IMG/VR virus record: IMGVR_UViG_3300043464_002284
Coordinates: 173,916 to 237,915 of that record
Strand: one strand, 5' to 3'
Length of the DNA: 64,000 nt
The notes beneath the pieces are model-generated. The model made no database searches and was not told the DNA's origin. It saw only the letters and a list, made by a program, of their open reading frames with translations. Position numbers and translations under genes: made by a program. Positions 22,743 to 63,062 of this stretch are shown here, piece by piece. Numbering within the stretch: position 1 is the first letter of the stretch; each line of letters begins with the position of its first letter.

Positions 22743-22746
22743 AAAA

Positions 22747-23751: not shown

Positions 23752-24063
23752 ATGTTTAATTTTCTGAAAAAACTCAGATATGCGGTCCGGTCTCCAAAAT
23801 GGCAAAACGTAAGAAAAGAACACATTAAAAATAATCCGTCTTGTATTGCCTGTGGCAGAGATAGGAAATTAGAAGTACACCACATAAAGCCTGTACATTT
23901 ATTTCCTGAGCTAGAACTAGATCCTTCAAATCTTGTTACATTGTGTGCTGATCCATGTCACTTATTGTTTGGTCATTTAATGCATTTCAAGAGTTGGAAT
24001 AGCTCTGTTATAGAGGATAGTTCTGATTATTTAGATAAGATAAAACGCAGACCATATTTTTGA
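23752..24063 (+). CDS. HNH endonuclease
   Basis: CIACG...EVHHIKP...NLVTLC..PCH. Confidence 0.9.
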   Translation: MFNFLKKLRYAVRSPKWQNVRKEHIKNNPSCIACGRDRKLEVHHIKPVHLFPELELDPSNLVTLCADPCHLLFGHLMHFKSWNSSVIEDSSDYLDKIKRRPYF

Positions 24064-24109
24064 ATATAGTGTATGTATAATATGACCAAAATACCCAAGA
24101 GGTTATATT

Positions 24110-25060: not shown

Positions 25061-25074
25061 AATGAGGTGATAAG

Positions 25075-27267: not shown

Positions 27268-27924
27268 TTAGTTATTCAAATAAAAGTTGTGTGATTTTCT
27301 AGTATTATAATTCCGTTCGTCTTCGTTGTTGAAATTCCAATTTTTATTTGCTGTTGGATCAGATATGACATAATTGTGAGTAAATATCTGATTTTGAATA
27401 TATTTGTGTTTACCTAAAATTTTAGCCACTTCCATGTACTCATTATCACAGTAGATGCTTTTATATGTAGGATTGTATATAAAATTAAATCTATCATAAT
27501 ATTTTTTAGTCATTATGCATCCTATGTCTAATCTTTCTTCCCAGCTAGGATTCATATAGTGTAAAGTTCCATCCATATCTGGATGATACTCAATCATATT
27601 TTTCACTATGATGTCATCGTAATCTTGAACTATAGGGAACAGATCGTCTGCGGCTAATATCAGTATATCGTAATCATTGGCATTATCCATATCGGCATTT
27701 ATTGCTTCAATTTTATTGCTTGATGTTCCATAATAGTATTCTATATTGGATTTGTTATTCAGGTAGTTTTTTATTTCTTCTGAGTTCATGCTCTCGTCAT
27801 CAGTATCAAATGAACATATAAATTTAAGAGTGTGTTTATGTGATTGCTTATCTATATACTCTGATAATACTTGTTTAAATTTTTCTGGACGACCCCTAGA
27901 AGGGAATTTTATTAAGATTTTCAT
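27268..27924 (-). CDS. GT-A fold (GT2-like) glycosyltransferase
   Basis: LIKFPSRGRPE, SFDTDD, AINAD, LAADDLFP, YCDNE. Confidence 0.75.
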   Translation of the reverse strand: MKILIKFPSRGRPEKFKQVLSEYIDKQSHKHTLKFICSFDTDDESMNSEEIKNYLNNKSNIEYYYGTSSNKIEAINADMDNANDYDILILAADDLFPIVQDYDDIIVKNMIEYHPDMDGTLHYMNPSWEERLDIGCIMTKKYYDRFNFIYNPTYKSIYCDNEYMEVAKILGKHKYIQNQIFTHNYVISDPTANKNWNFNNEDERNYNTRKSHNFYLNN

Positions 27925-28496
27925 AGTCTTTTACTTTCTGTTTTTTGTGCCAATGATGTCCAGCCATTGGTTCCTGTATTTTTGATTATTTTATAGTGGT
28001 TGTTTTCTAGATAATTATACACATTAGATTTTAAATGTAGATTTTCAAAATATATATTCAGGATATTAAATCGGCTAAAATCAATTGTTTGTATTATTCC
28101 ATCATCTAGGCCCTCTGTATCAATAAATAATATATCTATAGTATTAATATTATATCTATCAAATAGACCGTTTATTGTTTGACATGCTATCTTTTTTTCT
28201 ATAATGCCGTCTTCATCATATCCGTGTTTCAGTATGTGGCTTTTGTCTAAAGATGCAACCTCATACAAAGGTCCATCATTTTTGTGATAATAAAAGCTTG
28301 TTTCTGTTGCATCATTCTTTATTGATACTGCTATGTTTTCTATATGTTTATTTTTGATATGACTATAGCATTTCTCTATGTCTGAATTATGAAAGTCTAA
28401 TGGTTCGACTAAAACAAGTAAGTCAATATCTTTGTTTTTAATGATTTCCGTTAGGTCATCATTTCCTTTACAAACGCCTAGCTGAAATATTTTCAT
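27921..28496 (-). CDS. FkbM family methyltransferase
   Basis: QLGVCKGND, LVEP, IDILFIDTEGLD, IYFE. Confidence 0.85.
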   Translation of the reverse strand: MKIFQLGVCKGNDDLTEIIKNKDIDLLVLVEPLDFHNSDIEKCYSHIKNKHIENIAVSIKNDATETSFYYHKNDGPLYEVASLDKSHILKHGYDEDGIIEKKIACQTINGLFDRYNINTIDILFIDTEGLDDGIIQTIDFSRFNILNIYFENLHLKSNVYNYLENNHYKIIKNTGTNGWTSLAQKTESKRL

Positions 28497-29368
28497 ACAA
28501 ATTCCTTGACTAATTTTATAAATTCAGACGCTCTATTTTGGTAGCTGTGATTTTTTATTACTTTATTGTATCCAGATTCAGCGATTTGTTTTGTCAGTCT
28601 TAGGTCGTTAATCAACATATTTGCTTTGTATGTTAAGTCTTGCATATTATGATATATGACAATATCTTCCATATCAATAAACAGTTTATCAATATTTTCT
28701 GTGTGGTTTGTTAATAGTGCCGTTTTACACGCTAGTGTCTCGAATACTCTGTAGTTTATATCTTTGCTTATTGTTTTGTTTAGATGTATATCATAGGTAT
28801 TAATAGCAGACACCATGTCGTAACCTATATGCCAAACATCTTTTTGTATATTTATATCTAGATTTTTTTCTAATTCCTTTATGAGAGATTCTCTTTCTGG
28901 AAAAAGAGTACCACAAAATCCTATGTTGTATAATTTATTTGCTTTAAAAATTGGTTGAATTAAATCAGTATCTACAGCGTTAGGAAAATAATATGTTTTA
29001 GCTCCCAGAGCAGAAAAATGTTCTTGATCAGATTCTATTGAGCATAGAACGCCGTCTATTTTATGCTTTTGAACAGTTACCTTGTGAGCATTTAAATTAC
29101 AGTGAGAATCTATGCTCCAAAAAAATTTAGGTATTTTTATAGAAGATAGATCTGGTACCCAAGACGTTGTGTCGTAATTTTCTAGTAACAATACAGCATC
29201 ATGAGATGTGACTAAATCTTGAATATTGCTGGGGTGGTTGGGGTAGTTAAGACCCCAAACTGTACAGGAGTCACCATTTTTTTCAAAAGCTCTTTGAAGA
29301 CTCAGTGATTCTCTAAATAATTGATTTTTTTCGTGCCGACCCTTTTCTTGAATAATTAGTATTTTCAT
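28493..29368 (-). CDS. CgeB-like GT-B glycosyltransferase
   Basis: GFCGT...R, INYRVFETLAC...LLT, DIVIY, HSYQNRA. Confidence 0.85.
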   Translation of the reverse strand: MKILIIQEKGRHEKNQLFRESLSLQRAFEKNGDSCTVWGLNYPNHPSNIQDLVTSHDAVLLLENYDTTSWVPDLSSIKIPKFFWSIDSHCNLNAHKVTVQKHKIDGVLCSIESDQEHFSALGAKTYYFPNAVDTDLIQPIFKANKLYNIGFCGTLFPERESLIKELEKNLDINIQKDVWHIGYDMVSAINTYDIHLNKTISKDINYRVFETLACKTALLTNHTENIDKLFIDMEDIVIYHNMQDLTYKANMLINDLRLTKQIAESGYNKVIKNHSYQNRASEFIKLVKEFV

Positions 29369-29379
29369 TATTTAATTAT

Positions 29380-29991
29380 TTATTGTGGTATAAAAAATGT
29401 ATTACCAGAAGTTTTTGCATATTCTTTATAGTTTATGCTTTTAATAAAATCAATCAGAACGTATGTTTCCATGCTGTGTTCTACGCAAACAAGAGATGGT
29501 CTATTTTTAGTCCAGTCATTTGATGATAATACCTCCATATCCACACCTTCTGCATCTACACTTAAAAAGTCTACTAAATTATTATTTATGATACTATTTA
29601 GTGTTTTTGTTTGCGTTTTCACTGGATGATATTCAAACTTATCTCCGTGTTTTGATATCACTCTATTTTTAAAAGATTCAGAAATAGTAGAAACACAGGC
29701 ATCCTGTCCAGTAGAATACATAAAAAAATCGACTTCAGTTTCTTTATTTAAACAGGCGTTATTTAGTATAGTTATTTGATCATTATTACCATATAGTGAT
29801 TTTAGTGTTTCAAAAAAAACAGGGTGTGGTTCTACCAGAATTCCTCTCCAATTATATTGTTCTACTAAATATCTTGTATTAGAATAAGTAATCCCATCCA
29901 TTGCTCCTATATCCACAAAAAATCCATTTGTTTTCCCATTAAAAAATGGAATTATTATTGATTCCTCACCATATTGTGCATAAAATGACAT
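29380..29991 (-). CDS. FkbM family methyltransferase
   Basis: YAQYGEE, FVDIGAMDGITYSNT, GILVEP, DFLSVDAEG. Confidence 0.9.
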   Translation of the reverse strand: MSFYAQYGEESIIIPFFNGKTNGFFVDIGAMDGITYSNTRYLVEQYNWRGILVEPHPVFFETLKSLYGNNDQITILNNACLNKETEVDFFMYSTGQDACVSTISESFKNRVISKHGDKFEYHPVKTQTKTLNSIINNNLVDFLSVDAEGVDMEVLSSNDWTKNRPSLVCVEHSMETYVLIDFIKSINYKEYAKTSGNTFFIPQ

Positions 29992-30005
29992 AAATATTCC
30001 TAATA

Positions 30006-30692
30006 TTATAACATTGTGTAGTGATCTGGGTGTCTATTATTATATTCGTCATATATTTCTCCAACAAATCCACTATTTGTTCTTTCTGTTGGAAATGACT
30101 TGCTTTGATTCTCATCCAAAAGACGATATGAATCATGAATAAAAGAATACTCTTTAACTTTAGGATAGACGTATTCTCTTAGAAAGTTTTGATCAACTTG
30201 CCAGAAATTACCGTCCTCTGGAACAACCATAGCAATCTCCAGCCTGTTTAGTAAATTATTCCTACATCCCCACATTCCTCCTAATATAGCGGTATTGTGA
30301 TAAGGATGATCTCTCATAATATGAAAATCTTTATCGGAAGCCAACCATTCAGCAACAGCGTCCCCTTCCCTACTGCTTAATCTACTGTCAGCATCACGAG
30401 AAAGCATAACGTCTATCTTTTCATCGAAAGCCGGAAGAAATCTCCAAAACATTCCGGTCCAATTCCCCGGCTGATCCATAAAAATCAACTCAGTATTATC
30501 TATTCTTCTAAGAACGGCTACAGTAGATGATGGAACAGACTGACCTAGATAAACAATGGTTTTCCAGTCAGGGTATATTTGTAATCTCAGTTTAGCATTT
30601 TCTATTACCCCAATATTATATTTGGGATGATTTCCCCATAGACTGAAACATACTGCTTTGGTCATAGGTTTCCCGTGATTCTCTCGCACCAT
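30006..30692 (-). CDS. GT-A-like putative glycosyltransferase; start probably MTKAVCFSLWG (30664)
   Basis: FSLWG..PKY, GMFWRF, SRDADSR (DxD), FHIMRDHPYH, ILGGMWG. Confidence 0.6.
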   Translation of the reverse strand: MVRENHGKPMTKAVCFSLWGNHPKYNIGVIENAKLRLQIYPDWKTIVYLGQSVPSSTVAVLRRIDNTELIFMDQPGNWTGMFWRFLPAFDEKIDVMLSRDADSRLSSREGDAVAEWLASDKDFHIMRDHPYHNTAILGGMWGCRNNLLNRLEIAMVVPEDGNFWQVDQNFLREYVYPKVKEYSFIHDSYRLLDENQSKSFPTERTNSGFVGEIYDEYNNRHPDHYTML

Positions 30693-31936
30693 CCTTTTGA
30701 TTTGCTATAAGGCCACACAACCCAGTATTTGGGTTTAATATCAGTAGAGAATTCTCTCCAAATTTTACAGTATTTATCAGGGTCATTTTTCATCATATTG
30801 ATTTCATTGTCGTCTGCATCTTTTCGGAATAGGGTATTATCGTGCTCATCGTGGAATGCAACTACCCAGAAATCATAATCGGTTTCTGGAACCCTTTCGT
30901 ATCCAACATCTATACAATGTTTGAAAATCTTTAACAGAGCAATATCAAATTCTTCGTCAGAAGCATTTTGTAAAAGATCAGGAGGAGCTTTATGGTCTAA
31001 TACGTGTCTCTGGATAGCTCTTTTACCGAATGATAGTCCAGAATATTTTTCATAATCTCTTAGTGATCTAACTTTTCCAAATCCATAGGGTCCGAAATCA
31101 ATATCTCTTTTTTCTCCATCCATTTCAAAGAGTTTTCTATTTCTCAGATGAGATTCGTTATTTCTATTGACCCAGATAGGATCGTCGTCCCATTGTTTTG
31201 TTCGTCCTTTTCTGGTATATTCATGCCAACAAACAACTTTATGAGGATGATATAAGTCATATCCCTGAGTATAGGCTCTGGCTGCTATGCTTATTTCTTC
31301 TCCATGAAAATAATAATTAGGATCATGCTTTACTTCTTTGCAAAATTCTCCGACAGTAAAAGCAAAATGAGCACTATAAAATCTAGCTGGTAAAGGCTTA
31401 GTTTTATCGTCCCATGAATCAAATGATGCAGGAAGAAAAAAGACAGCTCCTTCTGGTATAAATCTATCAAAATTCATTTTCCATGGTTCTTGAACCCTCG
31501 CGGCTGGATCGTTATCTGGATCAAAACTGGGGATATAAGCCGTTAATAGGGGTTTGGGACTTCCGTTTTTTTGTAGTTCGGTTATCATTTCTATTAATGT
31601 TTCATCCCAATCTTGAACAAATCTATGATGACTATCGAGTTGTAGAGTATATTTTTCTCCTTGATATAATGCCTGAACAGCATTTCTGGCCCAGCATACA
31701 CCCTTGGACTCTTTGTAGTTTACGTCTAGGATTCTAAATCTTGAATCGTTTTTATATTCAGATATATCATCCCAATCATCTCCGTCTTTATGTTGCCATG
31801 CTATCCCGATCCTTAAATTTTCTGGATATTTAGCTTTCTCTATCATGTCCTTGAGAGTGGGGGATAGTTGAGGATCTCTATAAGCGGCTATTTGTACAAA
31901 AATTGTATTAGTTTTCTCTTCGCTCATGGGCTTCAT
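30662..31936 (-). CDS. GT60-like GlcNAc transferase (Skp1 hydroxyproline GlcNAc-transferase Gnt1 family)
   Basis: IFVQIAAYRDPQL, GVCWAR, LQLDSHHRF..WDETL, KPLLTAY, SAHFAF, FHGEE..IAARAYTQGYDLYHP, HEY. Confidence 0.85.
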   Translation of the reverse strand: MKPMSEEKTNTIFVQIAAYRDPQLSPTLKDMIEKAKYPENLRIGIAWQHKDGDDWDDISEYKNDSRFRILDVNYKESKGVCWARNAVQALYQGEKYTLQLDSHHRFVQDWDETLIEMITELQKNGSPKPLLTAYIPSFDPDNDPAARVQEPWKMNFDRFIPEGAVFFLPASFDSWDDKTKPLPARFYSAHFAFTVGEFCKEVKHDPNYYFHGEEISIAARAYTQGYDLYHPHKVVCWHEYTRKGRTKQWDDDPIWVNRNNESHLRNRKLFEMDGEKRDIDFGPYGFGKVRSLRDYEKYSGLSFGKRAIQRHVLDHKAPPDLLQNASDEEFDIALLKIFKHCIDVGYERVPETDYDFWVVAFHDEHDNTLFRKDADDNEINMMKNDPDKYCKIWREFSTDIKPKYWVVWPYSKSKGWCERITGNL

Positions 31937-33560
31937 AAAAATGTACTCTGTTGTGTGTTATGGGGCTTGCAAGTAGTATTGCTGATCTAATTTTATCTTC
32001 TCTGGTTAAACTATAAATATGACTCATCCATGTTTGTTCGTAAGGATGAGCCCATGTAGTATCTAAAAATAGTTTTTGATTGCCTTCTTGATCTATAATA
32101 TGAGGCCAATTGGAGTAGTAAATCTCTCCTTCAGCATAAGGATTCTGATTTAGCGTTTTAATAGCCTTGAATTTTGTAAATGGTTTTTTATTAATAGGAC
32201 CAAAGTATTCTATTTTCTTTGCCATTGGTACATTATGCCAACTCCACTGTTCTCCATTATGGCCATAAAATTCGCTAAAGCTAAACTTTAGAAAATCGTA
32301 CTCTTCAGTATCCATTATTCTAATAACACTATTAAAAAGATCATTGACATATTTAGATAATCCGAAATCGCATCTAGTATTTTTTTCTAGATCTATTAAC
32401 ATGTCGTCTTCAAAAAACATCATATACTTAGAGCCTAAATCCCTAAAATGTTCAGCTGCTAATTGTCTGCCTCCGCAAACTCCTATATTTCCTTTTCTTA
32501 TCTCGGTAAAACCATATTCCGATGAAATTCTATCGTATGCAGGGAAGAGTTCTTCTTTTGTGGTATTATTAATTAGATACTTATCTGTTTTCTTCAGAAA
32601 ATTGGCATCATATTTTTCGAATGAGTCTAGAACCATCTGCAACTGCGCTGGCGAATTAAATGCATTAATATACAAAACATTATTATTGTTCGAGGGCTGT
32701 TTGCGTTTTGTTACTTTAGACTCAAGTGTTGTGGTGTTGTTTTTGACATTCTCAAAAAAAGTACTAATTAATCCATCTTCATTGATTTTTTCGTATTCAT
32801 AAATATCTGGTTGAAGGTATGTCATTAGGGTAAATATGCTTTCTTCAGTACCCATAAAACCTTCGGATAGAGAATCTCTTAGGAGTCCATAGTAAAGTTC
32901 ATTGGCTTGGGATATGTATTCTTTATGTCCACCAAAAAATCCACCTCTAGCTACCCTATTCACTGTAGGAGAGTTAGCGAATTTTTTCATGCCATTAATG
33001 TCAAAACCATGAATTTCAGTAGACGTTTCATAAGGAAAACATATAAACATAAATTTTTTAACTAATTTGTCTATTTTTTCCATCACTTTGTCATGTGTAA
33101 AATAGCCGGGGTGAACAGTATTGGTAATACCACCATCAAGCCAGAATAGATAATCAGTATTAAAGAAATTAAATACTTTAGCATTATGTAATAAAAACAT
33201 CTTGCTCATAACCATAGGATTATACCACTCCATAGATCCTTGGGTACTATCTTTAAGCCAGCCTACTTGGTTTTGCCACTCGGGATTATTTCTTATTTCC
33301 TGAACTCTGTCAAAAAACGGGAAAAATGGTGACGTAAACTGGTCCTTTGAGTGATAAACTACTCTTGTGTTTTCTTTATTCCTTATTTCCCAAACGATAT
33401 CTTCTATAGAAGGGTCTATAAAAATACACATGGGTATCTCTTTAGCAGATAGTAGTCTCTTGAAATTGGTTAGATAGTGATCAAATCCTCTACTCCAACC
33501 CCCCTTTGCTTCACCTCTTCCGAGATCCCATACGCCAGTTACTATTGTGGAATTTATCAT
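31908..33560 (-). CDS. HtrL/YibB-like domain fused to a GT-A domain
   Basis: TIVTGVWDLGR, YNPMVMSKMFLL, N.FNTDYLFWLDGG, GGFFGG, EESI; C-terminal FFEDDM. Confidence 0.8.
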   Translation of the reverse strand: MINSTIVTGVWDLGRGEAKGGWSRGFDHYLTNFKRLLSAKEIPMCIFIDPSIEDIVWEIRNKENTRVVYHSKDQFTSPFFPFFDRVQEIRNNPEWQNQVGWLKDSTQGSMEWYNPMVMSKMFLLHNAKVFNFFNTDYLFWLDGGITNTVHPGYFTHDKVMEKIDKLVKKFMFICFPYETSTEIHGFDINGMKKFANSPTVNRVARGGFFGGHKEYISQANELYYGLLRDSLSEGFMGTEESIFTLMTYLQPDIYEYEKINEDGLISTFFENVKNNTTTLESKVTKRKQPSNNNNVLYINAFNSPAQLQMVLDSFEKYDANFLKKTDKYLINNTTKEELFPAYDRISSEYGFTEIRKGNIGVCGGRQLAAEHFRDLGSKYMMFFEDDMLIDLEKNTRCDFGLSKYVNDLFNSVIRIMDTEEYDFLKFSFSEFYGHNGEQWSWHNVPMAKKIEYFGPINKKPFTKFKAIKTLNQNPYAEGEIYYSNWPHIIDQEGNQKLFLDTTWAHPYEQTWMSHIYSLTREDKIRSAILLASPITHNRVHFYEAHERREN

Positions 33561-33604
33561 TGATATGGATTAGTTATAAAGAGGTTATCTGCCCGGCCTG
33601 CATA

Positions 33605-33684
33605 ATATTATTCCTTCTCCATCTGGTTGTCAATGCTTAATTTTTTTAGCAACATCTTGACTTTTTGAAAGATACGATTATACT
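33605..33684. promoter_or_regulatory. Divergent sigma70-type promoter pair driving both arms of the glycosylation island
   Basis: Minus: TTGACA (33633-33628)-17-TAATAT; plus: TTGACT (33657)-16-TATACT. Confidence 0.65.
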
Positions 33685-33735
33685 AATATTGGTTGTCGGT
33701 TTGAAAATTAATACGATTTTTTTAGCGAAAAGGCA

Positions 33736-33933
33736 ATGAAAAAGCAGAATAATGAAGGTGAATGGGACAAGAAGGAAGCAAGAAGAAAAAAGCTTCAGGA
33801 AAAGAGCCTATTTAAGGACGATCCCAAAAACGAAAAAACAGTGTCTCATTCTCTAAAGAAAGAGCTTAAAAAGAAAAAGCAGGAAATAGACGAAGAAGAG
33901 TGGGAAGATTGGGACAGGCATTATAATAGATAA
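33736..33933 (+). CDS. Small charged hypothetical protein
   Basis: K/E-rich. Confidence 0.6.
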   Translation: MKKQNNEGEWDKKEARRKKLQEKSLFKDDPKNEKTVSHSLKKELKKKKQEIDEEEWEDWDRHYNR

Positions 33934-33935
33934 TC

Positions 33936-34190
33936 ATGGAAAAATTTATCGAGGAACTCGGTGCTGGGGACATCTTTGAGGTAGAAAATCAAAGATTTGT
34001 AATAACATCTGATTTTAAGAAAAATGGAGATAGGCTTTGCATAAATCTTAATACTGGAAACGTTAGATGGTTTAAATCAGATTCTCACGTTATTCATATT
34101 AGTCTATATGCAATGGATAATAATAACAATTTTCATCCTATAAAAGAGATTAAATCAGATGTATCTACTAAAATTCAAAGTATTTTTTAA
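33936..34190 (+). CDS. Hypothetical protein
   Basis: Operonic packing. Confidence 0.6.
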   Translation: MEKFIEELGAGDIFEVENQRFVITSDFKKNGDRLCINLNTGNVRWFKSDSHVIHISLYAMDNNNNFHPIKEIKSDVSTKIQSIF

Positions 34191-34407
34191 GTCCTTGCTA
34201 TTTCATGTTTATTCAGGATTCCCAAAATCCACACAACAGCAAATCAACGATAGATACTCTATATGTATATCTTGTGAAAAATTCAATAAACAGAAATCAG
34301 AGTGTTCAGTTTGTGGATGTCTTATAGGAAAGAAAAAAAGATTTCTCAATAAATTAGCATGGGCAGATCAAGAATGCCCGATAGGCAAATGGAATAAACT
34401 CATTTAA
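34159..34407 (+). CDS. Small Cys-rich zinc-binding phage protein
   Basis: RYSICISC...CSVCGC...K...CPIGKW. Confidence 0.7.
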   Translation: MYLLKFKVFFKSLLFHVYSGFPKSTQQQINDRYSICISCEKFNKQKSECSVCGCLIGKKKRFLNKLAWADQECPIGKWNKLI

Positions 34408-34419
34408 TGGAGACCAATA

Positions 34420-34971
34420 ATGCAAACCAAAACAAGACAAAACCAAAACTATTATTTGATCAACAATAACGATATCTTTGAGTGCATCAAAAAAAGAACC
34501 CAAGCAGAAAGTAACGGATCAACAGTTATTGTTCCGCATGTATGTAATAATATTGATTTGTTTGACGCTGGCTTCGCTGGGCAAGTTGCACAATATTATC
34601 CAGAAGTAAAAGCCAATTATCACATGCTTGGAAAAACCTTTTTGAAAAACAATTTAGGACATGCACAAATAATTAAAGTTTATGAGCAACCAAAATACAA
34701 ACACAAACTATATTTTGTTAATATGATTTCTCAGAATGGGGTACGTAGTCCCAAAAATCCAAGACCCTTAAACTATGCGGCTTTAATAAGAAGCATGATC
34801 CATGTTAGTCAATTTATTCATAGTAACACTTCTTTTTTCCAAAAAAACGAAAACGTAGAAATCCATGCTCCTAAATTTGGGAGCGGCCTTGCTGGGGGTA
34901 ATTGGAATTTTATTAATGATTTGATTGATGATATTTGGTCAAAATATTCAGTATACATATATAATCAATAA
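34420..34971 (+). CDS. Macro domain (Appr-1''-p processing; T4 tk.4-like) protein
   Basis: PHVCNN...AGFA, VNMISQ, APKFGSGLAGGNW. Confidence 0.85.
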   Translation: MQTKTRQNQNYYLINNNDIFECIKKRTQAESNGSTVIVPHVCNNIDLFDAGFAGQVAQYYPEVKANYHMLGKTFLKNNLGHAQIIKVYEQPKYKHKLYFVNMISQNGVRSPKNPRPLNYAALIRSMIHVSQFIHSNTSFFQKNENVEIHAPKFGSGLAGGNWNFINDLIDDIWSKYSVYIYNQ

Positions 34972-34985
34972 GATATACTATTATT

Positions 34986-35648
34986 ATGAAAATACTAATT
35001 CTAGGCGGAACACAAATGCTAGGCAGGGATCTCGTTGAAAGATTACGAGATAATACAAATTATGACATAACTTTGGCTAATAGAGGAATAACTAATTCTA
35101 ATATTTTTCCAGAACTTAAACGTATAAAGCTAGATAGAAACAATAAAGAATCCTGTCTAGTATTGTCTAATAACGCTTATGATTATATACTAGATTTTTC
35201 TTGTTATAATTTAGCACAATTTCAAAATACCTGTCACTCAATACGCGGGAATAACTACATATATATATCCACACTTGGTGTTTTTGATGTTTCTGACGAT
35301 AACTACCTAAGTAATGATACTCCATATAGAAGATATATAAACTATTGTATAGACAAAAAAAGTATAGAACAATATATTTCTCAAACAGAATTTGCTTACA
35401 ACATCTTTATTATCAGACCATGTATCATATACGGAGAAAATGACTATACTCAAAGATTTGAACAAAGAAATAACATATACTATTGGAAGGGGACCGACAC
35501 CAAAGCAGACGAAGCAACTAATTGTGTAAATGTCTCAGTTGTTACACAAAAACTAGTAGGAATCTTAGAGAATGAGACCGAAAACAATAACAAAAAACAA
35601 ATTATTAATATAGGAAAAATACCCAATGCTCCAATATCAGCTCAATAG
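34986..35648 (+). CDS. NAD-dependent epimerase/dehydratase (SDR)
   Basis: ILILGGTQMLG, YIYIST, YCIDK, IRPCIIYG. Confidence 0.8.
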   Translation: MKILILGGTQMLGRDLVERLRDNTNYDITLANRGITNSNIFPELKRIKLDRNNKESCLVLSNNAYDYILDFSCYNLAQFQNTCHSIRGNNYIYISTLGVFDVSDDNYLSNDTPYRRYINYCIDKKSIEQYISQTEFAYNIFIIRPCIIYGENDYTQRFEQRNNIYYWKGTDTKADEATNCVNVSVVTQKLVGILENETENNNKKQIINIGKIPNAPISAQ

Positions 35649-36534
35649 AGATCCCAATTTACTTGAATCTCTGAAAGCACACAGCTATATCAATTCAAAT
35701 ATAAATATTGAGTACTACGATACTCCATTCCACCACATCCTTCTGAATAATGTCTTCACCCCTGAAGCATATCAATTATTGTGTGATAATTTTAGCGAAT
35801 ATATTAGCAGAACAGGACCATACAAAGACCAGCCAGGAGCGGTTCATGATTATGCCGGATATATATATGGCTTAAAAACAGCAGATTGTACTAATGGATA
35901 TGATTTCTTTATAAGTCCTATTTGGAAAAATTTTTGTTCTAGTATATTTAACATAGAGACAAATCAATATACTGCACTTAGCGCTCATTGGCATAAATCT
36001 CCAGCTAAACCTGGATTTGTACATAAAGACTTAAATATATGCTCAACATTACCGTCTAACGATGAAAATATTCAACTTACCGGCAATTGTTATTATTCTG
36101 ATGATTCTATAGACACACAACCCAACACCATTAAAATAATACGAAGCATAGCCCTCTTGTTTTATTTTAACAATAAAGACATTTTGGAAGAAAACGACAA
36201 GGGAGGAACAAGCATATATACAAATTGGAATTTTGATAGTTTTGTAAAAGAGATTAAACCAGTTAACAATAGTCTTTTTATATTTGAGGTTTGTCCTGAT
36301 TCTTTTCATGGATTTTCTGGAGCAAATTTCGATAGATCCAGTGTTGTACAATGGTTCCATTCTTCTCCAGCAGCACACCTTCATAGGCATTTAGATCGGG
36401 TCAAATATTATCATAAACACCATAATATGGCATACGAAAGATGGAACAGAAACAATAATCCGTGGCCAATAGAGCATGATGTTGAGTACCATAAATATTT
36501 CCAAAAAGACTTTCACAGTACGCTAAACGATTAG
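35626..36534 (+). CDS. 2OG-Fe(II) oxygenase (prolyl-hydroxylase-like)
   Basis: PFHHILLNNVF, HKD facial motif, GGT, KP..NSLFIF, SFHG, R for 2OG. Confidence 0.8.
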   Translation: MLQYQLNRDPNLLESLKAHSYINSNINIEYYDTPFHHILLNNVFTPEAYQLLCDNFSEYISRTGPYKDQPGAVHDYAGYIYGLKTADCTNGYDFFISPIWKNFCSSIFNIETNQYTALSAHWHKSPAKPGFVHKDLNICSTLPSNDENIQLTGNCYYSDDSIDTQPNTIKIIRSIALLFYFNNKDILEENDKGGTSIYTNWNFDSFVKEIKPVNNSLFIFEVCPDSFHGFSGANFDRSSVVQWFHSSPAAHLHRHLDRVKYYHKHHNMAYERWNRNNNPWPIEHDVEYHKYFQKDFHSTLND

Positions 36535-36555
36535 ACAGAAGACAAAAGAAAAGCA

Positions 36556-36584
36556 TTGCCTAGTCCCAGCGTCCCATGTATAAT
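36556..36584 (+). promoter_or_regulatory. sigma70-type promoter
   Basis: TTGCCT-17-TATAAT. Confidence 0.65.
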
Positions 36585-36623
36585 GTAATACTGGGAAAAG
36601 TCTACACTTTGGAGTAACATATT

Positions 36624-36764
36624 GTGCTTGGTTTTATTCTCGTCCTAACAGCGATATACGCTATCTTGAAAGCCCTTTGTGAAATACATGTCAATAGCAC
36701 AGATCCCTCAAAGAGCGTAAAATCCTCAAAAAACCTAATTTCTTTTTTATTCAATCTGGACTGA
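36624..36764 (+). CDS. Small membrane peptide (46 aa, GTG start, not in track)
   Basis: GGAG 9 nt upstream; MLGFILVLTAIYAILKALCEIHV... Confidence 0.45.
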   Translation: MLGFILVLTAIYAILKALCEIHVNSTDPSKSVKSSKNLISFLFNLD

Positions 36765-36771
36765 ATCCCAA

Positions 36772-37521
36772 ATGTCAAAATCGGCTATCTTTACTACCTA
36801 TTTTTCTCAAAAAAAACACCCTAACGATCCAAATGATCAGGCTGTAATAGGTAGAGGTAACGATGGTAGGGTATTGCAAAACTCAATCAAATACATAGAA
36901 CCTTGGTATGATTCGGTCGATAAGCTCAAAATTAATGGCGTTGTTTTTTACGATAATCTAGATAAAGACTTTATAAAAAAACATGAAACCGACTTGATTA
37001 AGTTCGTAAAAGTAGAGACATCAGAATATTCCAATAACGACTGGAGATTTTTTTGTTATCGTAAATATCTGGAAGACAACCCAGTAGACTCTGTATTTTT
37101 ATCAGATGGCTCAGATGTGATCGTTGTTCAAGAACCGTCCGACATTCTTAAAAAATATCCAGAAACAGACATATTCGTTTGTAAAGACTCAATCAAATTA
37201 TTCCAGTTTCCATACATATCAATACACAGAGAAGCTAAATGGGATGGGTATATATTTTTCTTATTGAACCAATATAAGCTAGATTTAATAAATATGGGTG
37301 TGATTGGCGGCGATTATAGCAATATTATGGATTTCTTGGATAAGTTTTGCCTTACAAGACTACAATTAGGCTCCCCAGATTTTAATTCGGACATGTGGAT
37401 CGGACAGTATGTTTTTAGATATTTAATGCAAAACAAGAATATACTAATTGGAGATCCATTTACCAGTAATTTTAAACAATACGAATACTCTAGAAAGGAT
37501 GTATATTTTATTCACAAATGA
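36772..37521 (+). CDS. GT-A-like putative glycosyltransferase
   Basis: VFLSDGSDVIV and LINMGVIGG, reminiscent of the lysyl-hydroxylase (PLOD) GT domain motifs FTDSYDV/LNSGGFIG. Confidence 0.55.
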   Translation: MSKSAIFTTYFSQKKHPNDPNDQAVIGRGNDGRVLQNSIKYIEPWYDSVDKLKINGVVFYDNLDKDFIKKHETDLIKFVKVETSEYSNNDWRFFCYRKYLEDNPVDSVFLSDGSDVIVVQEPSDILKKYPETDIFVCKDSIKLFQFPYISIHREAKWDGYIFFLLNQYKLDLINMGVIGGDYSNIMDFLDKFCLTRLQLGSPDFNSDMWIGQYVFRYLMQNKNILIGDPFTSNFKQYEYSRKDVYFIHK

Positions 37522-38432
37522 AATTTCATCTTATTAGCGATGGCTCGATACCAGTACCTCCCGTAATGGGATGGGGAGCATTAGAACGTGTAGTCTGGGC
37601 CTATAAAATAGAATTAGAAAAAGCTGGACACGAAGTCCTTATATCTAATCACATAGAAGACTTTATGGTTCTAGAAGACTATCGAAAATTCAAACCAGAC
37701 GTTGTACATAATCATCTAGGTAAGCACTATATGCCATTTAGTATGATGAAAGCACAACACAAGATTTTTACTAATCACGGAGGTGCTTTTAGATATTCAA
37801 TATCTTTTTGGAAAAGCATTTTGCCATTTTTACAAAAATCAAAAGCATTTATATTATCTAATATAGAAGAGTCCTTTTTTTTGGCTAATAATATAGATAC
37901 TCAAATTATGCCTAATGGAGTATTTTGTGATGAGATATCTTTCAACAACCAAGCAAAATATGATGCTTCTATATATCTAGGTAAAATAATGTCTATAAAA
38001 AGACAGGCAATTTTCCAGAGATTGGGTTTAGATGTAGTATATGTAGGAAATCAAGAAGACAGCAATTTTAATTACTCATCAGATAGGTACCTAGGCTCTT
38101 GGAATTACGAACAAGTTAAGGCTAACTTAACCCAATTCAGTAATCTTGTGTTACTCAGCCAGGACGAACTTCAGCCCTTGGTGTGTTTAGAAGCAATGTC
38201 TGCTGGTCTTGGACTAGTATTATCAGAGCCAGCAAGTCAATCACTAGATAAAACCAAACCCTGGATAACAGTAATACCAGAAACAAGAATTCAAGACATA
38301 GACTATATTAATAATACTATATCTAACAATAGACAAATTAGCAATCTAATGAGAACAGAGATTAGAACATATGCAAAAACTTTTGACTGGTCTAATATTA
38401 TTACAAATTACCTATCACAAATCATAATATGA
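37518..38432 (+). CDS. GT4-like glycosyltransferase
   Basis: PVPPVMGWGALERVV; ELQPLVCLEAMSAG (Ex7E); FDW. Confidence 0.8.
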   Translation: MKFHLISDGSIPVPPVMGWGALERVVWAYKIELEKAGHEVLISNHIEDFMVLEDYRKFKPDVVHNHLGKHYMPFSMMKAQHKIFTNHGGAFRYSISFWKSILPFLQKSKAFILSNIEESFFLANNIDTQIMPNGVFCDEISFNNQAKYDASIYLGKIMSIKRQAIFQRLGLDVVYVGNQEDSNFNYSSDRYLGSWNYEQVKANLTQFSNLVLLSQDELQPLVCLEAMSAGLGLVLSEPASQSLDKTKPWITVIPETRIQDIDYINNTISNNRQISNLMRTEIRTYAKTFDWSNIITNYLSQIII

Positions 38433-39100
38433 ACATACAAACAATATTATTTATGTGTAATGATTTCGAACGAGCTTTCTTTACACTACACTCTTTTCGT
38501 AGACATCATTCCAATATCCCAATAAGAGTAATTAATGCTGGTGGTAAAGATCCATCAAAGTATTTATCTTCTATTGGCGTGGAAGTAATAAATACAGACA
38601 ATCTATGGCATAAAAAAACCCACTGCGGTGTTGGATCTTTCAGCCCAGACTTTGCTAATCATCTATTTGAATACGGACTAAATCCTAAATATGACTACAC
38701 TCTATTCCTAGAAACAGATGTCCTAACAAATAGAACCATAAAGATTAAACCAAAGTATCACATCTCTGGGGTAACAAATCCATGTGGACCAAAAGAATCT
38801 ATTCTATATACTCACTTGGGTATTACTAATAATTTCTTACACACAGGATGTGGCGGAACTATCTTTTCTAAAGAATATTTTAGTCATATACATAATACAA
38901 ATTTTCACTTTTTTACTGAAATGTTTATTAAGTATCCGGAAAATTATTTTATGGATCTTATCCTCACCCTGGCTGCTAGAACAGCAGGACTGTCTTTTGG
39001 ATATTGGGAAGAGGTATCTAATATCCCCATACATTTTATTGGAGATAAACAATATAATGCAAACTATAACCAAACACTAGTACATAATTTTAAAATATGA
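38429..39100 (+). CDS. GT-A-like putative glycosyltransferase
   Basis: LFLETDVL DxD-like motif, GCGGTIF; cluster context. Confidence 0.55.
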   Translation: MNIQTILFMCNDFERAFFTLHSFRRHHSNIPIRVINAGGKDPSKYLSSIGVEVINTDNLWHKKTHCGVGSFSPDFANHLFEYGLNPKYDYTLFLETDVLTNRTIKIKPKYHISGVTNPCGPKESILYTHLGITNNFLHTGCGGTIFSKEYFSHIHNTNFHFFTEMFIKYPENYFMDLILTLAARTAGLSFGYWEEVSNIPIHFIGDKQYNANYNQTLVHNFKI

Positions 39101-39930
39101 GCAATCGTTTACTATATATATATCAGAAAGAGAGAGTATTAAAAGTCTATCATGGGGCAGAAGTCTATGAATCCAGAGGTATAATACTTGAAAAGATGAT
39201 AAAAGAAGCAGCAGAGTCTCAGGAGATAAATCAAAACTATAGATTTTTGATTAACACAGATGACTCCCCAATACAACATAATATTAATGGCATATCCTGT
39301 TATTCTTTTAGCACAATAACAAAAGACTACGATCATTGCTGTCCGTGTTATATTTTTCATAGCTGGCCCGAAGTAGGTATCGACAACTATTCTCGTCTGA
39401 CGGATTCCTTTATCGACTCTGAACCAGAATCATCAAAAGTTGGATGGATAGGACATCCAATGAGTATACCAAGAAAAATATTTAACGCTTATTATTCTAA
39501 CACATATTTTAGTCAAAGCCTAATTAATGATTGGAATAGATCAGACCCAAAACAACTACATATTCACACTAAAACATATTTGACTTTTCAGCAACAAATA
39601 GACAAATGGAAATACCTGATAGACTTCGAAGGAGCAGGATATTCTGGCAGAACTAAAATTTTATTAAATTCTCCTAGAATTGTTTTCTTTGTGGATCGAG
39701 AATATCAAGAATTTTGGCAGAAAAAATTAATACCCTGGAAACATTATGTTCCAGTTAAAAAAGACCTATCTGATCTGGAAGAAAACTACTCTAAAATAGA
39801 AAAAGATAAAGATTTACAACGATATATTAAAAATGAACAAAAACAATTTTGTCAAGAAAATCTTTTATACAAACACGCTATCCTTGAACTACAAAGAATA
39901 ATTAAAGAAAATATATATGTTGAAAGCTAA
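39097..39930 (+). CDS. GT90 / CAP10 domain glycosyltransferase
   Basis: KWKYLIDFEGAGYSGR, EFW...LIPWKHYVPVKKDLSDL. Confidence 0.85.
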   Translation: MSNRLLYIYQKERVLKVYHGAEVYESRGIILEKMIKEAAESQEINQNYRFLINTDDSPIQHNINGISCYSFSTITKDYDHCCPCYIFHSWPEVGIDNYSRLTDSFIDSEPESSKVGWIGHPMSIPRKIFNAYYSNTYFSQSLINDWNRSDPKQLHIHTKTYLTFQQQIDKWKYLIDFEGAGYSGRTKILLNSPRIVFFVDREYQEFWQKKLIPWKHYVPVKKDLSDLEENYSKIEKDKDLQRYIKNEQKQFCQENLLYKHAILELQRIIKENIYVES

Positions 39931-40930
39931 AATTATAGGTTGTGGACTAAGTGGTGTAACATCAGCAATTATCCTCAAAGAACGAGGATATGATGTGGAA
40001 ATATTTGATAGTAGAAGTCATATAGCCGGAAATTGTTATGACACAAAAGAAAATGATGTAACTGTACACAAGTACGGAGCACATATATTCCACACAAACG
40101 ATGAAGAGGTTTGGAGATTTTTAAATAGATACACATCTTTTAATTCTTATTCACACAAAGTAAGAGCTAATACTGACTATGGTTTAATTTCTATTCCCTA
40201 TAACTACCTTACACGCGATCAGATAGGAAAAGATTTAAGTCCGGAAGAAATACAGAAAACTATTTTTGTTGACTATTCTGAAAGACACTGGGGTATACCG
40301 TGGAAAGATCTGCCAAAATCTATTTCCTCAAGATTACCAAATAAGAGAGAGAACTATGACGATAGATACTTTACAGATAAATATCAAGGTATTCCATCTC
40401 TTGGATATACTTCTATGTTTTCAAATATGCTGGATGGTATAAAAGTAAATCTAGATGTACCAAAAAACCTTTACAAAAAAATTCTTAGAGATAACAATTA
40501 TGACATATTAGTATATACAGGCAAGCCAGATGATTATTTTGAATATTGTTATGGAGAACTAGAATATAGATCTCTCAAATTTGAGCATACTATCGCACCA
40601 AAGAATGGTCTATTTTCTTGGGAAAACGGGGCAGTAATTAATGAATGCAATAAATTATTATATAACAGAACTGTTGATAACTCTGTATTTTTAAATGAAG
40701 AAGTTAATCATACAGTATACACACGAGACTATCCAGAAGAACACAATAGCACCAACGACCCTATCTATCCCAAAAATTTTGGAAGTCACAACGATAAATA
40801 TAGCTTATATAACAGGCTGATGCATCAACAGAATAAAACAATATTTGTTGGAAGATTAGCTACTTATAAATATCTTGATATGTGGATGGCTATTAAACAA
40901 GTTTTTCAAAAACTAGAATTTAATATATGA
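39917..40930 (+). CDS. glf: UDP-galactopyranose mutase
   Basis: GCGLSG, HIAGNCYD, HKYGAHIFHT, WG, YFTDKYQGIP, LEYRSL, YTR, GRLATYKYLDM. Confidence 0.95.
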   Translation: MLKAKIIGCGLSGVTSAIILKERGYDVEIFDSRSHIAGNCYDTKENDVTVHKYGAHIFHTNDEEVWRFLNRYTSFNSYSHKVRANTDYGLISIPYNYLTRDQIGKDLSPEEIQKTIFVDYSERHWGIPWKDLPKSISSRLPNKRENYDDRYFTDKYQGIPSLGYTSMFSNMLDGIKVNLDVPKNLYKKILRDNNYDILVYTGKPDDYFEYCYGELEYRSLKFEHTIAPKNGLFSWENGAVINECNKLLYNRTVDNSVFLNEEVNHTVYTRDYPEEHNSTNDPIYPKNFGSHNDKYSLYNRLMHQQNKTIFVGRLATYKYLDMWMAIKQVFQKLEFNI

Positions 40931-53348: not shown

Positions 53349-53353
53349 ACAAT

Positions 53354-63051: not shown

Positions 63052-63062
63052 ACGGATATAAT

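What the first reader, a model, noticed from the sequence alone, without database searches (positions are those of the whole stretch)
30662..37521. Hydroxylate-then-glycosylate module: GT60 Gnt1-like, 2OG oxygenase and PLOD-like GT
In Dictyostelium a prolyl 4-hydroxylase (PhyA) and GT60 Gnt1 modify Skp1 hydroxyproline, and trypanosome GT60s start O-glycans on Thr of mucins. Here a GT60-like gene, a prolyl-hydroxylase-type 2OG oxygenase, and an almost adjacent GT-A protein with lysyl-hydroxylase-GT-like motifs co-occur with Pro/Thr- and Pro/Gly-rich structural proteins (53354, 51960 tail GPGPGPG, 63063 [13 protein letters not shown]). This would be a eukaryote-style post-translational pathway in a phage.
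Basis: partly seen in the sequence, partly recalled or inferred. Interest (0 to 1): 0.75.

Follow-up and report, generated by a model that had tools for sequence, protein, structure and literature searches.

The report
Phage glycan island: three separate cassettes
The three genes are real, but across related phages they are inherited separately: the GT60 sugar transferase tracks Thr-Pro-repeat (mucin-like) virion proteins, while the prolyl-hydroxylase-like oxygenase is tied to a dehydrogenase, not to the transferases.

Summary
The window is the last 64 kb of a 238-kb T4-like (rIIA/rIIB) phage genome from a metagenome. All three genes exist.
- 30662-31936(-) is a clear GT60/PF11397 enzyme (E 4e-76, invariant D-S-H).
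- 35626-36534 is a 2OG oxygenase of the prolyl-hydroxylase fold with an invariant HxD...H...R. Its best solved match is OGFOD1 (Z 18.5), closely followed by PolD and PasI (PasI solved with an octanosyl-acid phosphate ligand).
- 36772-37521 is a GT-A enzyme with an invariant DxxD. Its fold ties between the LH3/PLOD3 GT domain and GT6.

They do not form one module. GT60 travels with a two-domain HtrL transferase (64/80 loci) and almost never with the oxygenase (1/80). Six complete GT60 genomes lack the oxygenase, and two complete oxygenase genomes lack GT60. The oxygenase travels with, or is fused to, a short SDR (34/41 loci). The GT-A gene belongs to a GT4/unknown/GT90/UDP-Galf-mutase block.

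GT60 presence tracks TPTxTPT repeat coding (12/13 against 1/10 records, plus the unrelated phage XacN1). This suggests direct Thr O-glycosylation of virion linker proteins without hydroxyproline. The oxygenase substrate stays open: the fusions favour a sugar or small molecule, and a weak (GP)n association keeps protein proline possible.

The parts
26293..30692 (-). Distal part of the minus-strand glycan operon. It holds 324-aa and 218-aa unknowns, FkbM methyltransferase (27921-28496), a Glyco_trans_1_2 enzyme (28493-29368), FkbM methyltransferase (29380-29991) and a 228-aa unknown (30006-30692).
   Evidence: Pfam: PF05050 1.9e-10 and 1.4e-19; PF13524 1.9e-22. The genes overlap or abut. The 228-aa gene lies near GT60 in 18/80 loci. 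No protein has a TM segment.
30662..31936 (-). GT60-family glycosyltransferase (424 aa). Proposed to start O-glycans on Thr/Ser of TP-repeat proteins.
   Evidence: PF11397 3.9e-76; phrog_24687 1e-170. D101-S-H103 is invariant. It is soluble. It co-occurs with TP repeats.
31908..33560 (-). Two-domain HtrL/WlaTC-type glycosyltransferase (550 aa), the conserved partner of GT60.
   Evidence: PF09612 3.1e-15 on residues 4-256; the C-terminal part weakly matches phrog_842. It lies within 10 kb of GT60 in 64/80 loci. It sits 4 kb from GT60 in XacN1 at 40% identity over the full length. Atlas clusters are virus-dominated and often fused to methyltransferases.
33561..33735 (.). Divergent intergenic gap between the GT60 operon and the plus-strand genes.
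   Evidence: Sigma-70-like sites lie on both strands: + 33657-33684, - 33633-33605 and - 33705-33677. These are consensus matches only; the region as a whole is not enriched.
33736..34971 (+). Three small ORFs (65, 84 and 82 aa) and a macro-domain-like protein (34420-34971).
   Evidence: phrog_335 1.4e-19. The order s84-s82-macro is conserved next to the oxygenase in marine relatives.
34986..35648 (+). Short NAD(P)-dependent SDR of the epimerase/dehydratase family (220 aa), overlapping the oxygenase start by 23 nt.
   Evidence: PF01370 9.4e-8. G7, G8, G13, S95, Y120 and K124 are invariant. The profile's PDB hits are YlbE and NDP-sugar SDRs. It lies beside the oxygenase in 34/41 loci and is fused to it in L026, L044 and P0043.
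35626..36534 (+). Fe(II)/2OG oxygenase of the prolyl-hydroxylase (OGFOD1/PolD-like) fold; substrate unknown.
36772..37521 (+). Stand-alone GT-A glycosyltransferase with DxxD, first gene of a separate block.
   Evidence: A promoter-like site lies at 36556-36584 in the 237-nt gap upstream. Its neighbours across 58 loci are GT4 (22), the 223-aa gene (14) and UGM (11).
37518..40930 (+). Rest of that block: a GT4-like enzyme (37518-38432), a 223-aa unknown (38429-39100), a GT90 POGLUT-like enzyme (39097-39930) and UDP-galactopyranose mutase (39917-40930).
   Evidence: phrog_33732 3e-64. PF05686 1.2e-18 and PF03275 4e-47. POGLUT1 7.5e-12.
40944..42251 (-). 435-aa protein with an AbfB (arabinofuranose-binding type) domain.
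   Evidence: PF05270 1.4e-10.
51960..54334 (+). Candidate acceptor proteins. One is 462 aa with a phage-tail-tip-like motif and a (GP)n C-terminus. The other is 326 aa with PTPTPT linkers.
61894..64000 (+). Candidate acceptor proteins. One is 385 aa with about 250 aa of TP repeats. A second TP-repeat gene starts at 63063 (N-terminal [13 protein letters not shown]) and runs off the record's end.

Best explanation
The 6.9-kb span is not one pathway. It is the junction of three cassettes inside a roughly 16-20-kb island of soluble, cytoplasmic sugar-handling enzymes in a 238-kb T4-like phage.

- Cassette A (minus strand) holds GT60, the two-domain HtrL transferase, further transferases and two FkbM methyltransferases. 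I infer that it starts and extends methylated O-glycans directly on Thr/Ser of the TP-repeat linkers of about ten large fibre-, lectin- or decoration-like phage proteins. That would make mucin-like virion glycoproteins without any hydroxyproline step.
- Cassette B is a catalytically intact short SDR plus the P4H-fold oxygenase, translationally coupled. I infer a two-step redox tailoring pair: hydroxylation followed by NAD(P)-dependent oxidation or reduction. Its substrate would be a sugar, nucleotide sugar or other small molecule feeding or decorating the glycans.
- Cassette C (GT-A/DxxD, GT4-like, 223-aa unknown, GT90, UDP-Galp mutase) adds further sugars, including galactofuranose.

Shown here: the gene families, the catalytic motifs, the independent inheritance, the fusions and the GT60-TP-repeat co-occurrence. 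Inferred: the donors, the acceptors, and the assumption that the TP-repeat proteins are in the virion.
For: Independence of the cassettes:
- Searches give neighbour counts of 64/80, 1/80, 34/41, 1/41 and 1/58.
- Searches cover whole genomes, with positive controls.

SDR-oxygenase coupling:
- The two genes overlap by 23 nt.
- They are fused in both orders.
- Members of the wider family are fused to adh_short SDRs and Stf0 sulfotransferases.
- Distant bacterial homologues sit beside an SDR and sulfotransferases.
- An Atlas cluster from giant viruses carries Epimerase/Polysacc_synt_2 families and matches the oxygenase model at TM 0.60.
- PolD and PasI score nearly as high as OGFOD1; the PasI entry has a bound octanosyl-acid phosphate.
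- The SDR triad is intact.

GT60 and TP repeats:
- 12/13 against 1/10 records, Fisher 1.1e-4.
- At protein level, GT60+ genomes carry 34-696 residues of TP runs (G017 is the exception, with 0). GT60- genomes carry 0, 0 and 32.
- XacN1, an independent lineage, has GT60+HtrL and 51 TP-pattern hits, several of them in large proteins next to tail genes.

Cytoplasmic acceptor: no island protein has a TM segment and the genome has no Wzx/Wzy-like protein.

The TP-repeat proteins carry RCC1, PA-IL lectin and DUF642 domains. They also have weak tail, fibre and head-decoration hits.

From established knowledge, all characterised GT60 enzymes are polypeptide alpha-GlcNAc transferases. GT90 includes protein O-glucosyltransferases.
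Against: - No biochemical or proteomic data exist; the phage is known only from a metagenome.
- No bacterial or phage GT60 has a known acceptor.
- The TP-repeat association rests on related records, many of them incomplete. I count perhaps 3-4 independent contrasts. Two exceptions exist: G017 is GT60+ without TP repeats, and G011 is GT60- with one (TP)14 linker.
- The oxygenase's best solved match is a protein prolyl hydroxylase (OGFOD1, Z 18.5, 21% identity).
- Exact GPGPGPG coding occurs only in oxygenase-bearing records (5/11 against 0/23).
- The GT60-operon/oxygenase juxtaposition is conserved in marine relatives at about 50% identity. Those relatives have no homologue of this SDR beside the oxygenase.
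- The complex prediction for oxygenase and SDR gave no answer.
Confidence: 0.5

Rival explanations
1. The oxygenase is a true peptidyl-prolyl hydroxylase acting on Pro-rich linkers of phage structural proteins: (GP)n, (SPP)n and poly-Pro. The hydroxyproline is then glycosylated, either by GT60 as in the Skp1 pathway or by other island enzymes. The latter would give extensin-like Hyp-O-Galf/Araf.
For: - The best solved match is OGFOD1; Tpa1, bacterial P4H, PHD2 and PhyA all score Z 15 or more. PF13661 passes its threshold.
- Exact GPGPGPG coding occurs only in oxygenase-bearing records (5/11 against 0/23, Fisher 0.0017). The hits lie in large proteins and include (GP)21 and (GP)13 in the 1833-aa protein of this genome.
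- G010 and G017, both oxygenase-bearing, have long (SPP)n linkers.
- The island also encodes UDP-Galf mutase and an AbfB-domain protein.
- An Atlas cluster of chlorophyte proteins fuses PF11397 with PF13640/PF13661, so the logic exists in eukaryotes.
- GT60-operon/oxygenase synteny is conserved in marine relatives.
Against: - GT60 occurs without the oxygenase in 79/80 loci and in 6/6 complete genomes. The oxygenase occurs without GT60 in G008 and G018.
- The SDR and sulfotransferase fusions have no role in any known protein prolyl hydroxylation.
- PPxPPxPP-type repeats are also common in records lacking the oxygenase. Records with 4 or more hits number 6/23 without it against 9/17 with it, and G026 has about 100 aa of (PPG/PPS)n.
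- PolD and PasI show that this fold also accepts non-protein ligands.
Confidence: 0.27
2. The island does not modify phage proteins. Its soluble transferases and sugar-nucleotide enzymes act on the host's lipid-linked LPS, capsule or cell-wall precursors during infection, for example to block superinfection or adsorption of released progeny.
For: - HtrL/YibB and GT25-like families are named after LPS-core loci.
- Related islands carry Capsule_synth, CMP-sugar synthetase and DegT-type genes.
- Soluble GTs acting on lipid-linked acceptors are common (established knowledge).
Against: - Neither the island nor the genome encodes an initiating polyprenyl-phosphate transferase, flippase, polymerase or ligase.
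- The phage looks strictly lytic (T4-like).
- The GT60 and GT90 families are known as protein O-transferases.
- This model does not explain the GT60-TP-repeat co-occurrence in two unrelated phage lineages.
Confidence: 0.15
3. The enzymes hypermodify phage DNA: hydroxylation of a base followed by glycosylation, as in T-even hmC glucosylation or base J.
For: - The genome is T4-like.
- The C-terminal half of the HtrL protein weakly matches a PHROG named for T-even beta-glucosyl-HMC alpha-glucosyltransferase (7e-4).
- A nucleoside 2-deoxyribosyltransferase-like gene lies nearby.
Against: - The genome has no thymidylate-synthase-family hydroxymethylase; the control search rang in 10 of 14 genomes.
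- The oxygenase is of the P4H/OGFOD1 type, not TET/JBP.
- The PHROG match is marginal.
Confidence: 0.03

Closest known systems
Skp1 hydroxyproline glycosylation pathway of Dictyostelium/Toxoplasma (PhyA prolyl 4-hydroxylase, then GT60 Gnt1)
   Same: A GT60/PF11397 enzyme and a P4H-fold 2OG oxygenase are encoded within 4 kb of each other. Both are soluble and cytoplasmic. PhyA (6t8m) is a structural neighbour of the oxygenase at Z 15.1.
   Different: The two phage genes are not co-inherited. The oxygenase is closer to OGFOD1 and PolD than to PhyA. It is coupled to an SDR. No Skp1-like target was sought or seen.
Trypanosoma cruzi mucin UDP-GlcNAc:polypeptide alpha-GlcNAc transferases and Dictyostelium pp-alpha-GlcNAc-T2 (GT60 acting on Thr/Ser of mucin-like repeats)
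   Same: The family is the same (PF11397, with a DxH motif). The genome is full of Thr/Pro-rich repeat proteins, and these track the presence of GT60.
   Different: The eukaryotic enzymes are Golgi membrane proteins; the phage enzyme has no TM segment and carries a 120-aa C-terminal extension. Neither donor nor acceptor has been tested.
Virus-encoded protein modification systems: Mimivirus L230 (collagen lysyl hydroxylase plus glucosyltransferase), PBCV-1 prolyl 4-hydroxylase, mycobacteriophage capsid/tail-tube glycosylation (Freeman et al. 2023, cited in PMC12619734)
   Same: A virus brings its own cytoplasmic enzymes to decorate its structural proteins. The stand-alone GT-A here resembles the LH3 GT domain in fold and in its DxxD motif.
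   Different: There is no lysyl-hydroxylase domain and no collagen G-X-Y repeats. The GT-A gene ties with GT6 enzymes in fold search and is not linked to the oxygenase. The GT families differ from those I recall for mycobacteriophages (not checked here).
OGFOD1/Tpa1 ribosomal prolyl hydroxylases, and the PolD/PasI 2OG oxygenases
   Same: The DSBH core, the HxD...H triad and the Arg for 2OG are shared. Z scores are 18.5 (OGFOD1), 16.9 (PolD), 16.7 (Tpa1) and 16.6 (PasI).
   Different: Identity is only 15-21%. The phage protein has its own N-terminal (1-110) and C-terminal (248-302) elements with invariant Trp and Tyr residues. It lacks the second domain of OGFOD1/Tpa1. Its partner is an SDR.

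Membership tests
CAZy GT60 / Pfam PF11397 (polypeptide alpha-GlcNAc transferases) | Significant full-domain match to the family profile | tested here: met
   E 3.9e-76, 257 bits against a cut-off of 21; profile positions 1-44 and 95-350 of 352 are covered.
CAZy GT60 / Pfam PF11397 (polypeptide alpha-GlcNAc transferases) | GT-A metal-binding DxH motif | tested here: met
   D101-S102-H103 is invariant in 10 diverse phage homologues, including XacN1 and a 625-aa variant.
CAZy GT60 / Pfam PF11397 (polypeptide alpha-GlcNAc transferases) | UDP-GlcNAc donor and a Thr/Ser/Hyp polypeptide acceptor | not testable with these tools
   The only evidence is indirect: co-occurrence with TP-repeat proteins.
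PhyA-Gnt1 type hydroxylate-then-glycosylate pair | Hydroxylase and GT60 are co-inherited (linked or fused) as one functional unit | tested here: not met
   The oxygenase lies near GT60 in 1/80 loci. It is absent from 6/6 complete GT60+ genomes. GT60 is absent from the complete oxygenase-bearing genomes G008 and G018.
Prolyl-hydroxylase-like 2OG oxygenases (PF13640/PF13661) | DSBH fold with an HxD...H iron triad and a basic 2OG-binding residue | tested here: met
   H133, D135, H228 and R237 are invariant. The model has pLDDT 93.5. Z is 15-18.5 to OGFOD1, Tpa1, P4H and PHD2.
Prolyl-hydroxylase-like 2OG oxygenases (PF13640/PF13661) | Score above the Pfam gathering threshold | tested here: met
   PF13661 scores 28.9 against 27, which is marginal. 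PF13640 scores 24.9 against 27 and falls below.
Prolyl-hydroxylase-like 2OG oxygenases (PF13640/PF13661) | Peptidyl-proline is the substrate | tested here: inconclusive
   For: OGFOD1 is the best match, and GPGPGPG occurs only in oxygenase-bearing records. Against: the SDR and sulfotransferase fusions, near-equal scores for PolD and PasI, and Pro-rich repeats in records lacking the oxygenase.
LH3/PLOD3 glycosyltransferase domain | GT-A fold close to the LH3 GT domain, with a DxxD metal motif | tested here: met
   6wfv scores Z 15.8 with rmsd 2.9 over 182 residues. This ties with GT6 enzymes at Z 15.7 over 207 residues. D112 and D115 are invariant.
LH3/PLOD3 glycosyltransferase domain | Physical or genetic coupling to a lysyl or prolyl hydroxylase | tested here: not met
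   The protein is a stand-alone 249 aa. The oxygenase lies within 8 kb in 1/58 loci. The conserved neighbours are GT4, the 223-aa gene and UGM. The best AFDB matches are C-terminal domains of eukaryotic proteins; two of the top six carry an epimerase/dehydratase annotation.
Extended SDR, NDP-sugar epimerase/dehydratase family (PF01370) | Rossmann glycine motif and a Ser...YxxxK catalytic triad | tested here: met
   G7, G8, G13, S95, Y120 and K124 are invariant in 17 sequences. PF01370 9.4e-8.
Extended SDR, NDP-sugar epimerase/dehydratase family (PF01370) | C-terminal substrate-binding domain (proteins of about 300 aa or more) | tested here: not met
   The protein is only 220 aa, and the best PDB hit is the 219-aa YlbE. 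It belongs to the widespread short (200-245 aa) clusters of this family.

The most novel reading that the evidence does not exclude
Large aquatic phages, and independently Xanthomonas jumbo phages, make true mucin- or extensin-like virion glycoproteins. A eukaryote-type polypeptide GlcNAc-transferase (GT60) with an HtrL partner would glycosylate Thr in TP repeats. In a subset of these phages, a P4H-fold oxygenase would hydroxylate (GP)n/(SPP)n linkers for further furanose glycosylation. Together these would form a complete, modular, cytoplasmic protein O-glycosylation toolkit in bacteriophages.
Probability: 0.15. Interest if true: 0.85.

Novelty: new variant of a known kind. Interest (0 to 1): 0.6.

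Why it matters
Virion glycosylation in phages has so far been shown in mycobacteriophages, as cited in PMC12619734. My literature searches found nothing on GT60 enzymes or TP-repeat glycoproteins in phages.

The GT60+HtrL cassette is very common in uncultured large phages. Atlas clusters of the two families are virus-dominated; the largest HtrL cluster has 3,145 members. If the cassette decorates Thr/Pro-repeat fibres, a large class of phage surface proteins would be glycoproteins. That would bear on host recognition, on sticking to mucus or particles, on protease resistance and on antigenicity.

The SDR-oxygenase pair is fused in both gene orders, and its wider family is fused to sulfotransferases. 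It is an uncharacterised two-enzyme unit worth biochemical study, whatever its substrate.

Tried and rejected
- DNA search of the region against 50,697 phage records found no match. The oxygenase has no tblastn hit there either.
- DNA hypermodification was rejected. The genome has no ThyA-family hydroxymethylase and the oxygenase is not of the TET/JBP type.
- A cyanophage origin was not supported: there is no psbA.
- The T4 late-promoter motif TATAAATA is not enriched (9 found against 10 expected). Sigma-70-like and terminator scans do not exceed shuffles. I therefore infer nothing about timing of expression.
- The complex prediction for oxygenase and SDR returned 'no answer'. I do not use it as evidence either way.
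- phmmer of GT60 and HtrL against PDB found no usable hit.
- I tested 'Pro/Gly-rich repeats mark the oxygenase' in two ways. The exact GPGPGPG pattern supports it. The general PPxPPxPP pattern does not separate the groups. That pattern is strand- and frame-blind, and both it and GPGPGPG read the same backwards, so the reversed-pattern control says nothing.
- The paper on 'moraphages' (PMC12619734) mentions glycosyltransferases only in general terms.

Full report
**Setting.** The window is the last 64 kb of a single-contig, 237,915-bp virus record. IMG/VR classes it as complete with terminal repeats. It encodes rIIA and rIIB, has about 35% G+C and has no close relative among 50,697 deposited phage genomes. 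Between about 26.3 and 46.4 kb lies a dense island of sugar-handling genes:
- two FkbM methyltransferases
- a Glyco_trans_1_2 enzyme
- GT60
- a 550-aa HtrL/YibB protein
- a short SDR
- a 2OG oxygenase
- a Pfam-less GT-A protein
- a GT4-like enzyme
- GT90
- UDP-galactopyranose mutase
- an AbfB-domain protein
- a dehydrogenase and one more transferase

None of these proteins has a hydrophobic segment. The genome has no credible Wzx/Wzy-type membrane protein.

- GT60 (30662-31936, minus strand) matches PF11397 at E 3.9e-76. Its D-S-H motif is invariant in ten diverse phage homologues.
- The oxygenase (35626-36534) passes PF13661 marginally. H133, D135, H228 and R237 are invariant in 36 homologues, and the model is confident (pLDDT 93.5).
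  - Foldseek ranks PolD and PasI first, then prolyl hydroxylases. PasI is solved with an octanosyl-acid phosphate ligand.
  - VIA-align ranks human OGFOD1 first (Z 18.5, rmsd 2.2 Å, 21% identity). PolD (16.9), Tpa1 (16.7), PasI (16.6), Pseudomonas P4H (15.7), PHD2 (15.4) and Dictyostelium PhyA (15.1) follow.
  - It is therefore a member of the prolyl-hydroxylase-like superfamily, but the fold alone does not say whether the substrate is a protein.
- The third gene (36772-37521) is a GT-A enzyme (pLDDT 93.4) with D112 and D115 invariant. VIA-align puts the LH3/PLOD3 glucosyltransferase domain first (Z 15.8), level with GT6 enzymes (Z 15.7-15.0). Foldseek prefers GT6. The best AlphaFold-DB matches are C-terminal domains of eukaryotic proteins (TM about 0.8, 20-25% identity). 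Two of the top six carry an epimerase/dehydratase annotation.

**The three genes are not one module.** I collected 41 oxygenase loci, 80 GT60 loci and 58 GT-A loci from IMG/VR, with flanks of 8-10 kb. I then asked which window proteins recur near each gene.
- GT60 is accompanied by the HtrL protein in 64/80 loci. The oxygenase, the SDR and the GT-A gene each appear in 1/80.
- The oxygenase is accompanied by the SDR in 34/41 loci, on either side. GT60 appears in 15/41 and the GT-A gene in 1/41.
- The GT-A gene is followed by the GT4-like gene (22/58), the 223-aa gene (14) and the mutase (11). The oxygenase appears in 1/58.
- At whole-genome level, six complete GT60-bearing genomes lack the oxygenase, while the same profile found it in 5/5 known carriers.
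- Conversely, the complete oxygenase-bearing genomes G008 and G018 lack GT60.
- A further 17 GT60-bearing records also lack the oxygenase.
- The juxtaposition seen in this window is conserved in a marine subgroup at about 50% identity. It is therefore not random, but it is not obligatory either.

**The oxygenase is tied to an SDR.**
- In the window the SDR gene overlaps the oxygenase start by 23 nt.
- Single polypeptides exist in both orders: SDR-oxygenase (L026, 496 aa; P0043, 506 aa) and oxygenase-SDR (L044, 490 aa; P0178; P0187).
- The SDR keeps its glycine motif and its Ser-Tyr-Lys triad. Its profile finds YlbE and nucleotide-sugar SDRs in the PDB.
- A profile search of 1.84 billion representatives found 656 family members. 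Among the long ones, four are fused to classical SDRs and six to Stf0-type sulfotransferases. I know Stf0 as a carbohydrate sulfotransferase.
- Distant bacterial homologues lie between an SDR and sulfotransferases.
- An Atlas cluster of 869-aa giant-virus proteins carries Epimerase/Polysacc_synt_2 families and matches the oxygenase model at TM 0.60.
- These partners make sense for tailoring a sugar or small molecule (hydroxylate, then oxidise or sulfate). They have no known role in protein prolyl hydroxylation.
- The complex prediction gave no answer.

**GT60 tracks Thr-Pro repeats.** This genome has ten ORFs with TP-rich stretches, including proteins of 1,833 and 1,236 aa and the 385-aa protein at 61894-63051. 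They carry RCC1 propeller, PA-IL lectin and DUF642 domains, plus weak tail, fibre and head-decoration hits. I searched for a coding pattern for TPTxTPT.
- It gave 14-88 hits in 12 of 13 GT60-bearing records and hits in 1 of 10 GT60-lacking records. The reversed-pattern control gave 0-2. Fisher's test gives 1.1e-4.
- Among complete genomes the split is 9/9 against 0/2.
- Protein-level counts in 13 fully fetched genomes agree.
- The oxygenase shows no positive association with TP repeats (7/17 with it, 6/6 without it).
- XacN1, an unrelated Xanthomonas jumbo phage, carries GT60 (49%) and the HtrL protein (40%) 4 kb apart. It has 51 hits against 0 in the control, several of them in large hypothetical proteins beside tail genes.
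- Caveats: the records are related, many are fragments, and two exceptions exist (G017, G011).

**Could the oxygenase still be a prolyl hydroxylase?** Some evidence says yes.
- The exact GPGPGPG coding pattern occurs in 5 of 11 oxygenase-bearing records and in 0 of 23 records without it (Fisher 0.0017).
- The hits lie in large proteins. They include (GP)21 and (GP)13 in the 1,833-aa protein of this genome.
- G010 and G017 have long (SPP)n linkers.

Other evidence weakens this.
- G026, which lacks the oxygenase, has about 100 aa of (PPG/PPS)n.
- A general PPxPPxPP pattern with four or more hits occurs in 6/23 oxygenase-lacking against 9/17 oxygenase-bearing records. That is only a trend.
- An Atlas cluster of chlorophyte proteins fuses PF11397 with PF13640/PF13661.

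**Other readings.**
- DNA glycosylation is unlikely, because there is no thymidylate-synthase-family hydroxymethylase.
- Host-envelope remodelling cannot be excluded. However, no initiating transferase, flippase or polymerase is encoded, and that reading does not explain the TP-repeat association.

**Verdict.** Literature searches found no description of GT60 enzymes or TP-repeat glycoproteins in phages. The most interesting outputs are two testable units: a widespread GT60+HtrL cassette that may make mucin-like phage surface proteins, and an uncharacterised SDR-oxygenase pair.

Noticed in passing
window 57887-58798 and 58817-61876: Two extremely cysteine-rich proteins (303 and 1019 aa) built of repeated C-x-x-C / CC-x-G-x-C-Y-D/N-P units. 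The 1019-aa protein has no PHROG match; the 303-aa one was not scanned.
   Followed up: no
window 63063-64000 and G000:1-2194: The record's roughly 225-bp 'terminal repeat' lies inside TP-repeat coding DNA. The gene starting at 63063 probably continues into the RCC1-propeller ORF at G000:236-2194. The repeat may therefore be an assembly end caused by the TP repeats rather than a true genome terminus.
   Followed up: partly
G000:72848-78349 (-) and G000:81201-100883 (-): A 1833-aa protein carries TP repeats, (GP)21 and (GP)13, with weak head-decoration and tail-fibre hits. Next to it lies a 6560-aa ORF.
   Followed up: partly
L018:2021-4187, L032:10888-12244, L048:10882-12913: In related phages, the space between oxygenase and SDR is filled by HTTM-domain proteins (vitamin-K-carboxylase-like), DUF6445, DUF6734 and a methyltransferase matching PF13578, CmcI and TylF. 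The cassette can evidently grow into a longer pathway.
   Followed up: partly
L188 (Xanthomonas phage XacN1, AP018399.1 214153-231505): GT60 and the HtrL-type transferase flank a carbamoyltransferase and two unknown genes. The same phage has TP repeats in an ORF232-237 paralogue family, in ORF369-372 beside tail genes, and in the large (about 2820-aa) ORF384.
   Followed up: partly
window 34420-34971: A macro-domain-like protein (phrog_335 'phosphatase') is preceded by two conserved small ORFs. This trio is conserved upstream of the oxygenase in marine relatives that have no homologue of this SDR beside the oxygenase.
   Followed up: no
window 21503-25833: A RuvB-like AAA protein, a Volactin homologue (83% identical in relatives), an S8 peptidase and a trypsin-like protease form a conserved backbone. 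In other phages the SDR-oxygenase cassette is inserted into this backbone instead of the glycan island.
   Followed up: partly
window 40944-42251 (-): A 435-aa protein with an AbfB (arabinofuranose-binding type) domain sits next to the UDP-galactopyranose mutase. It could be a furanose-binding or furanose-trimming component.
   Followed up: no
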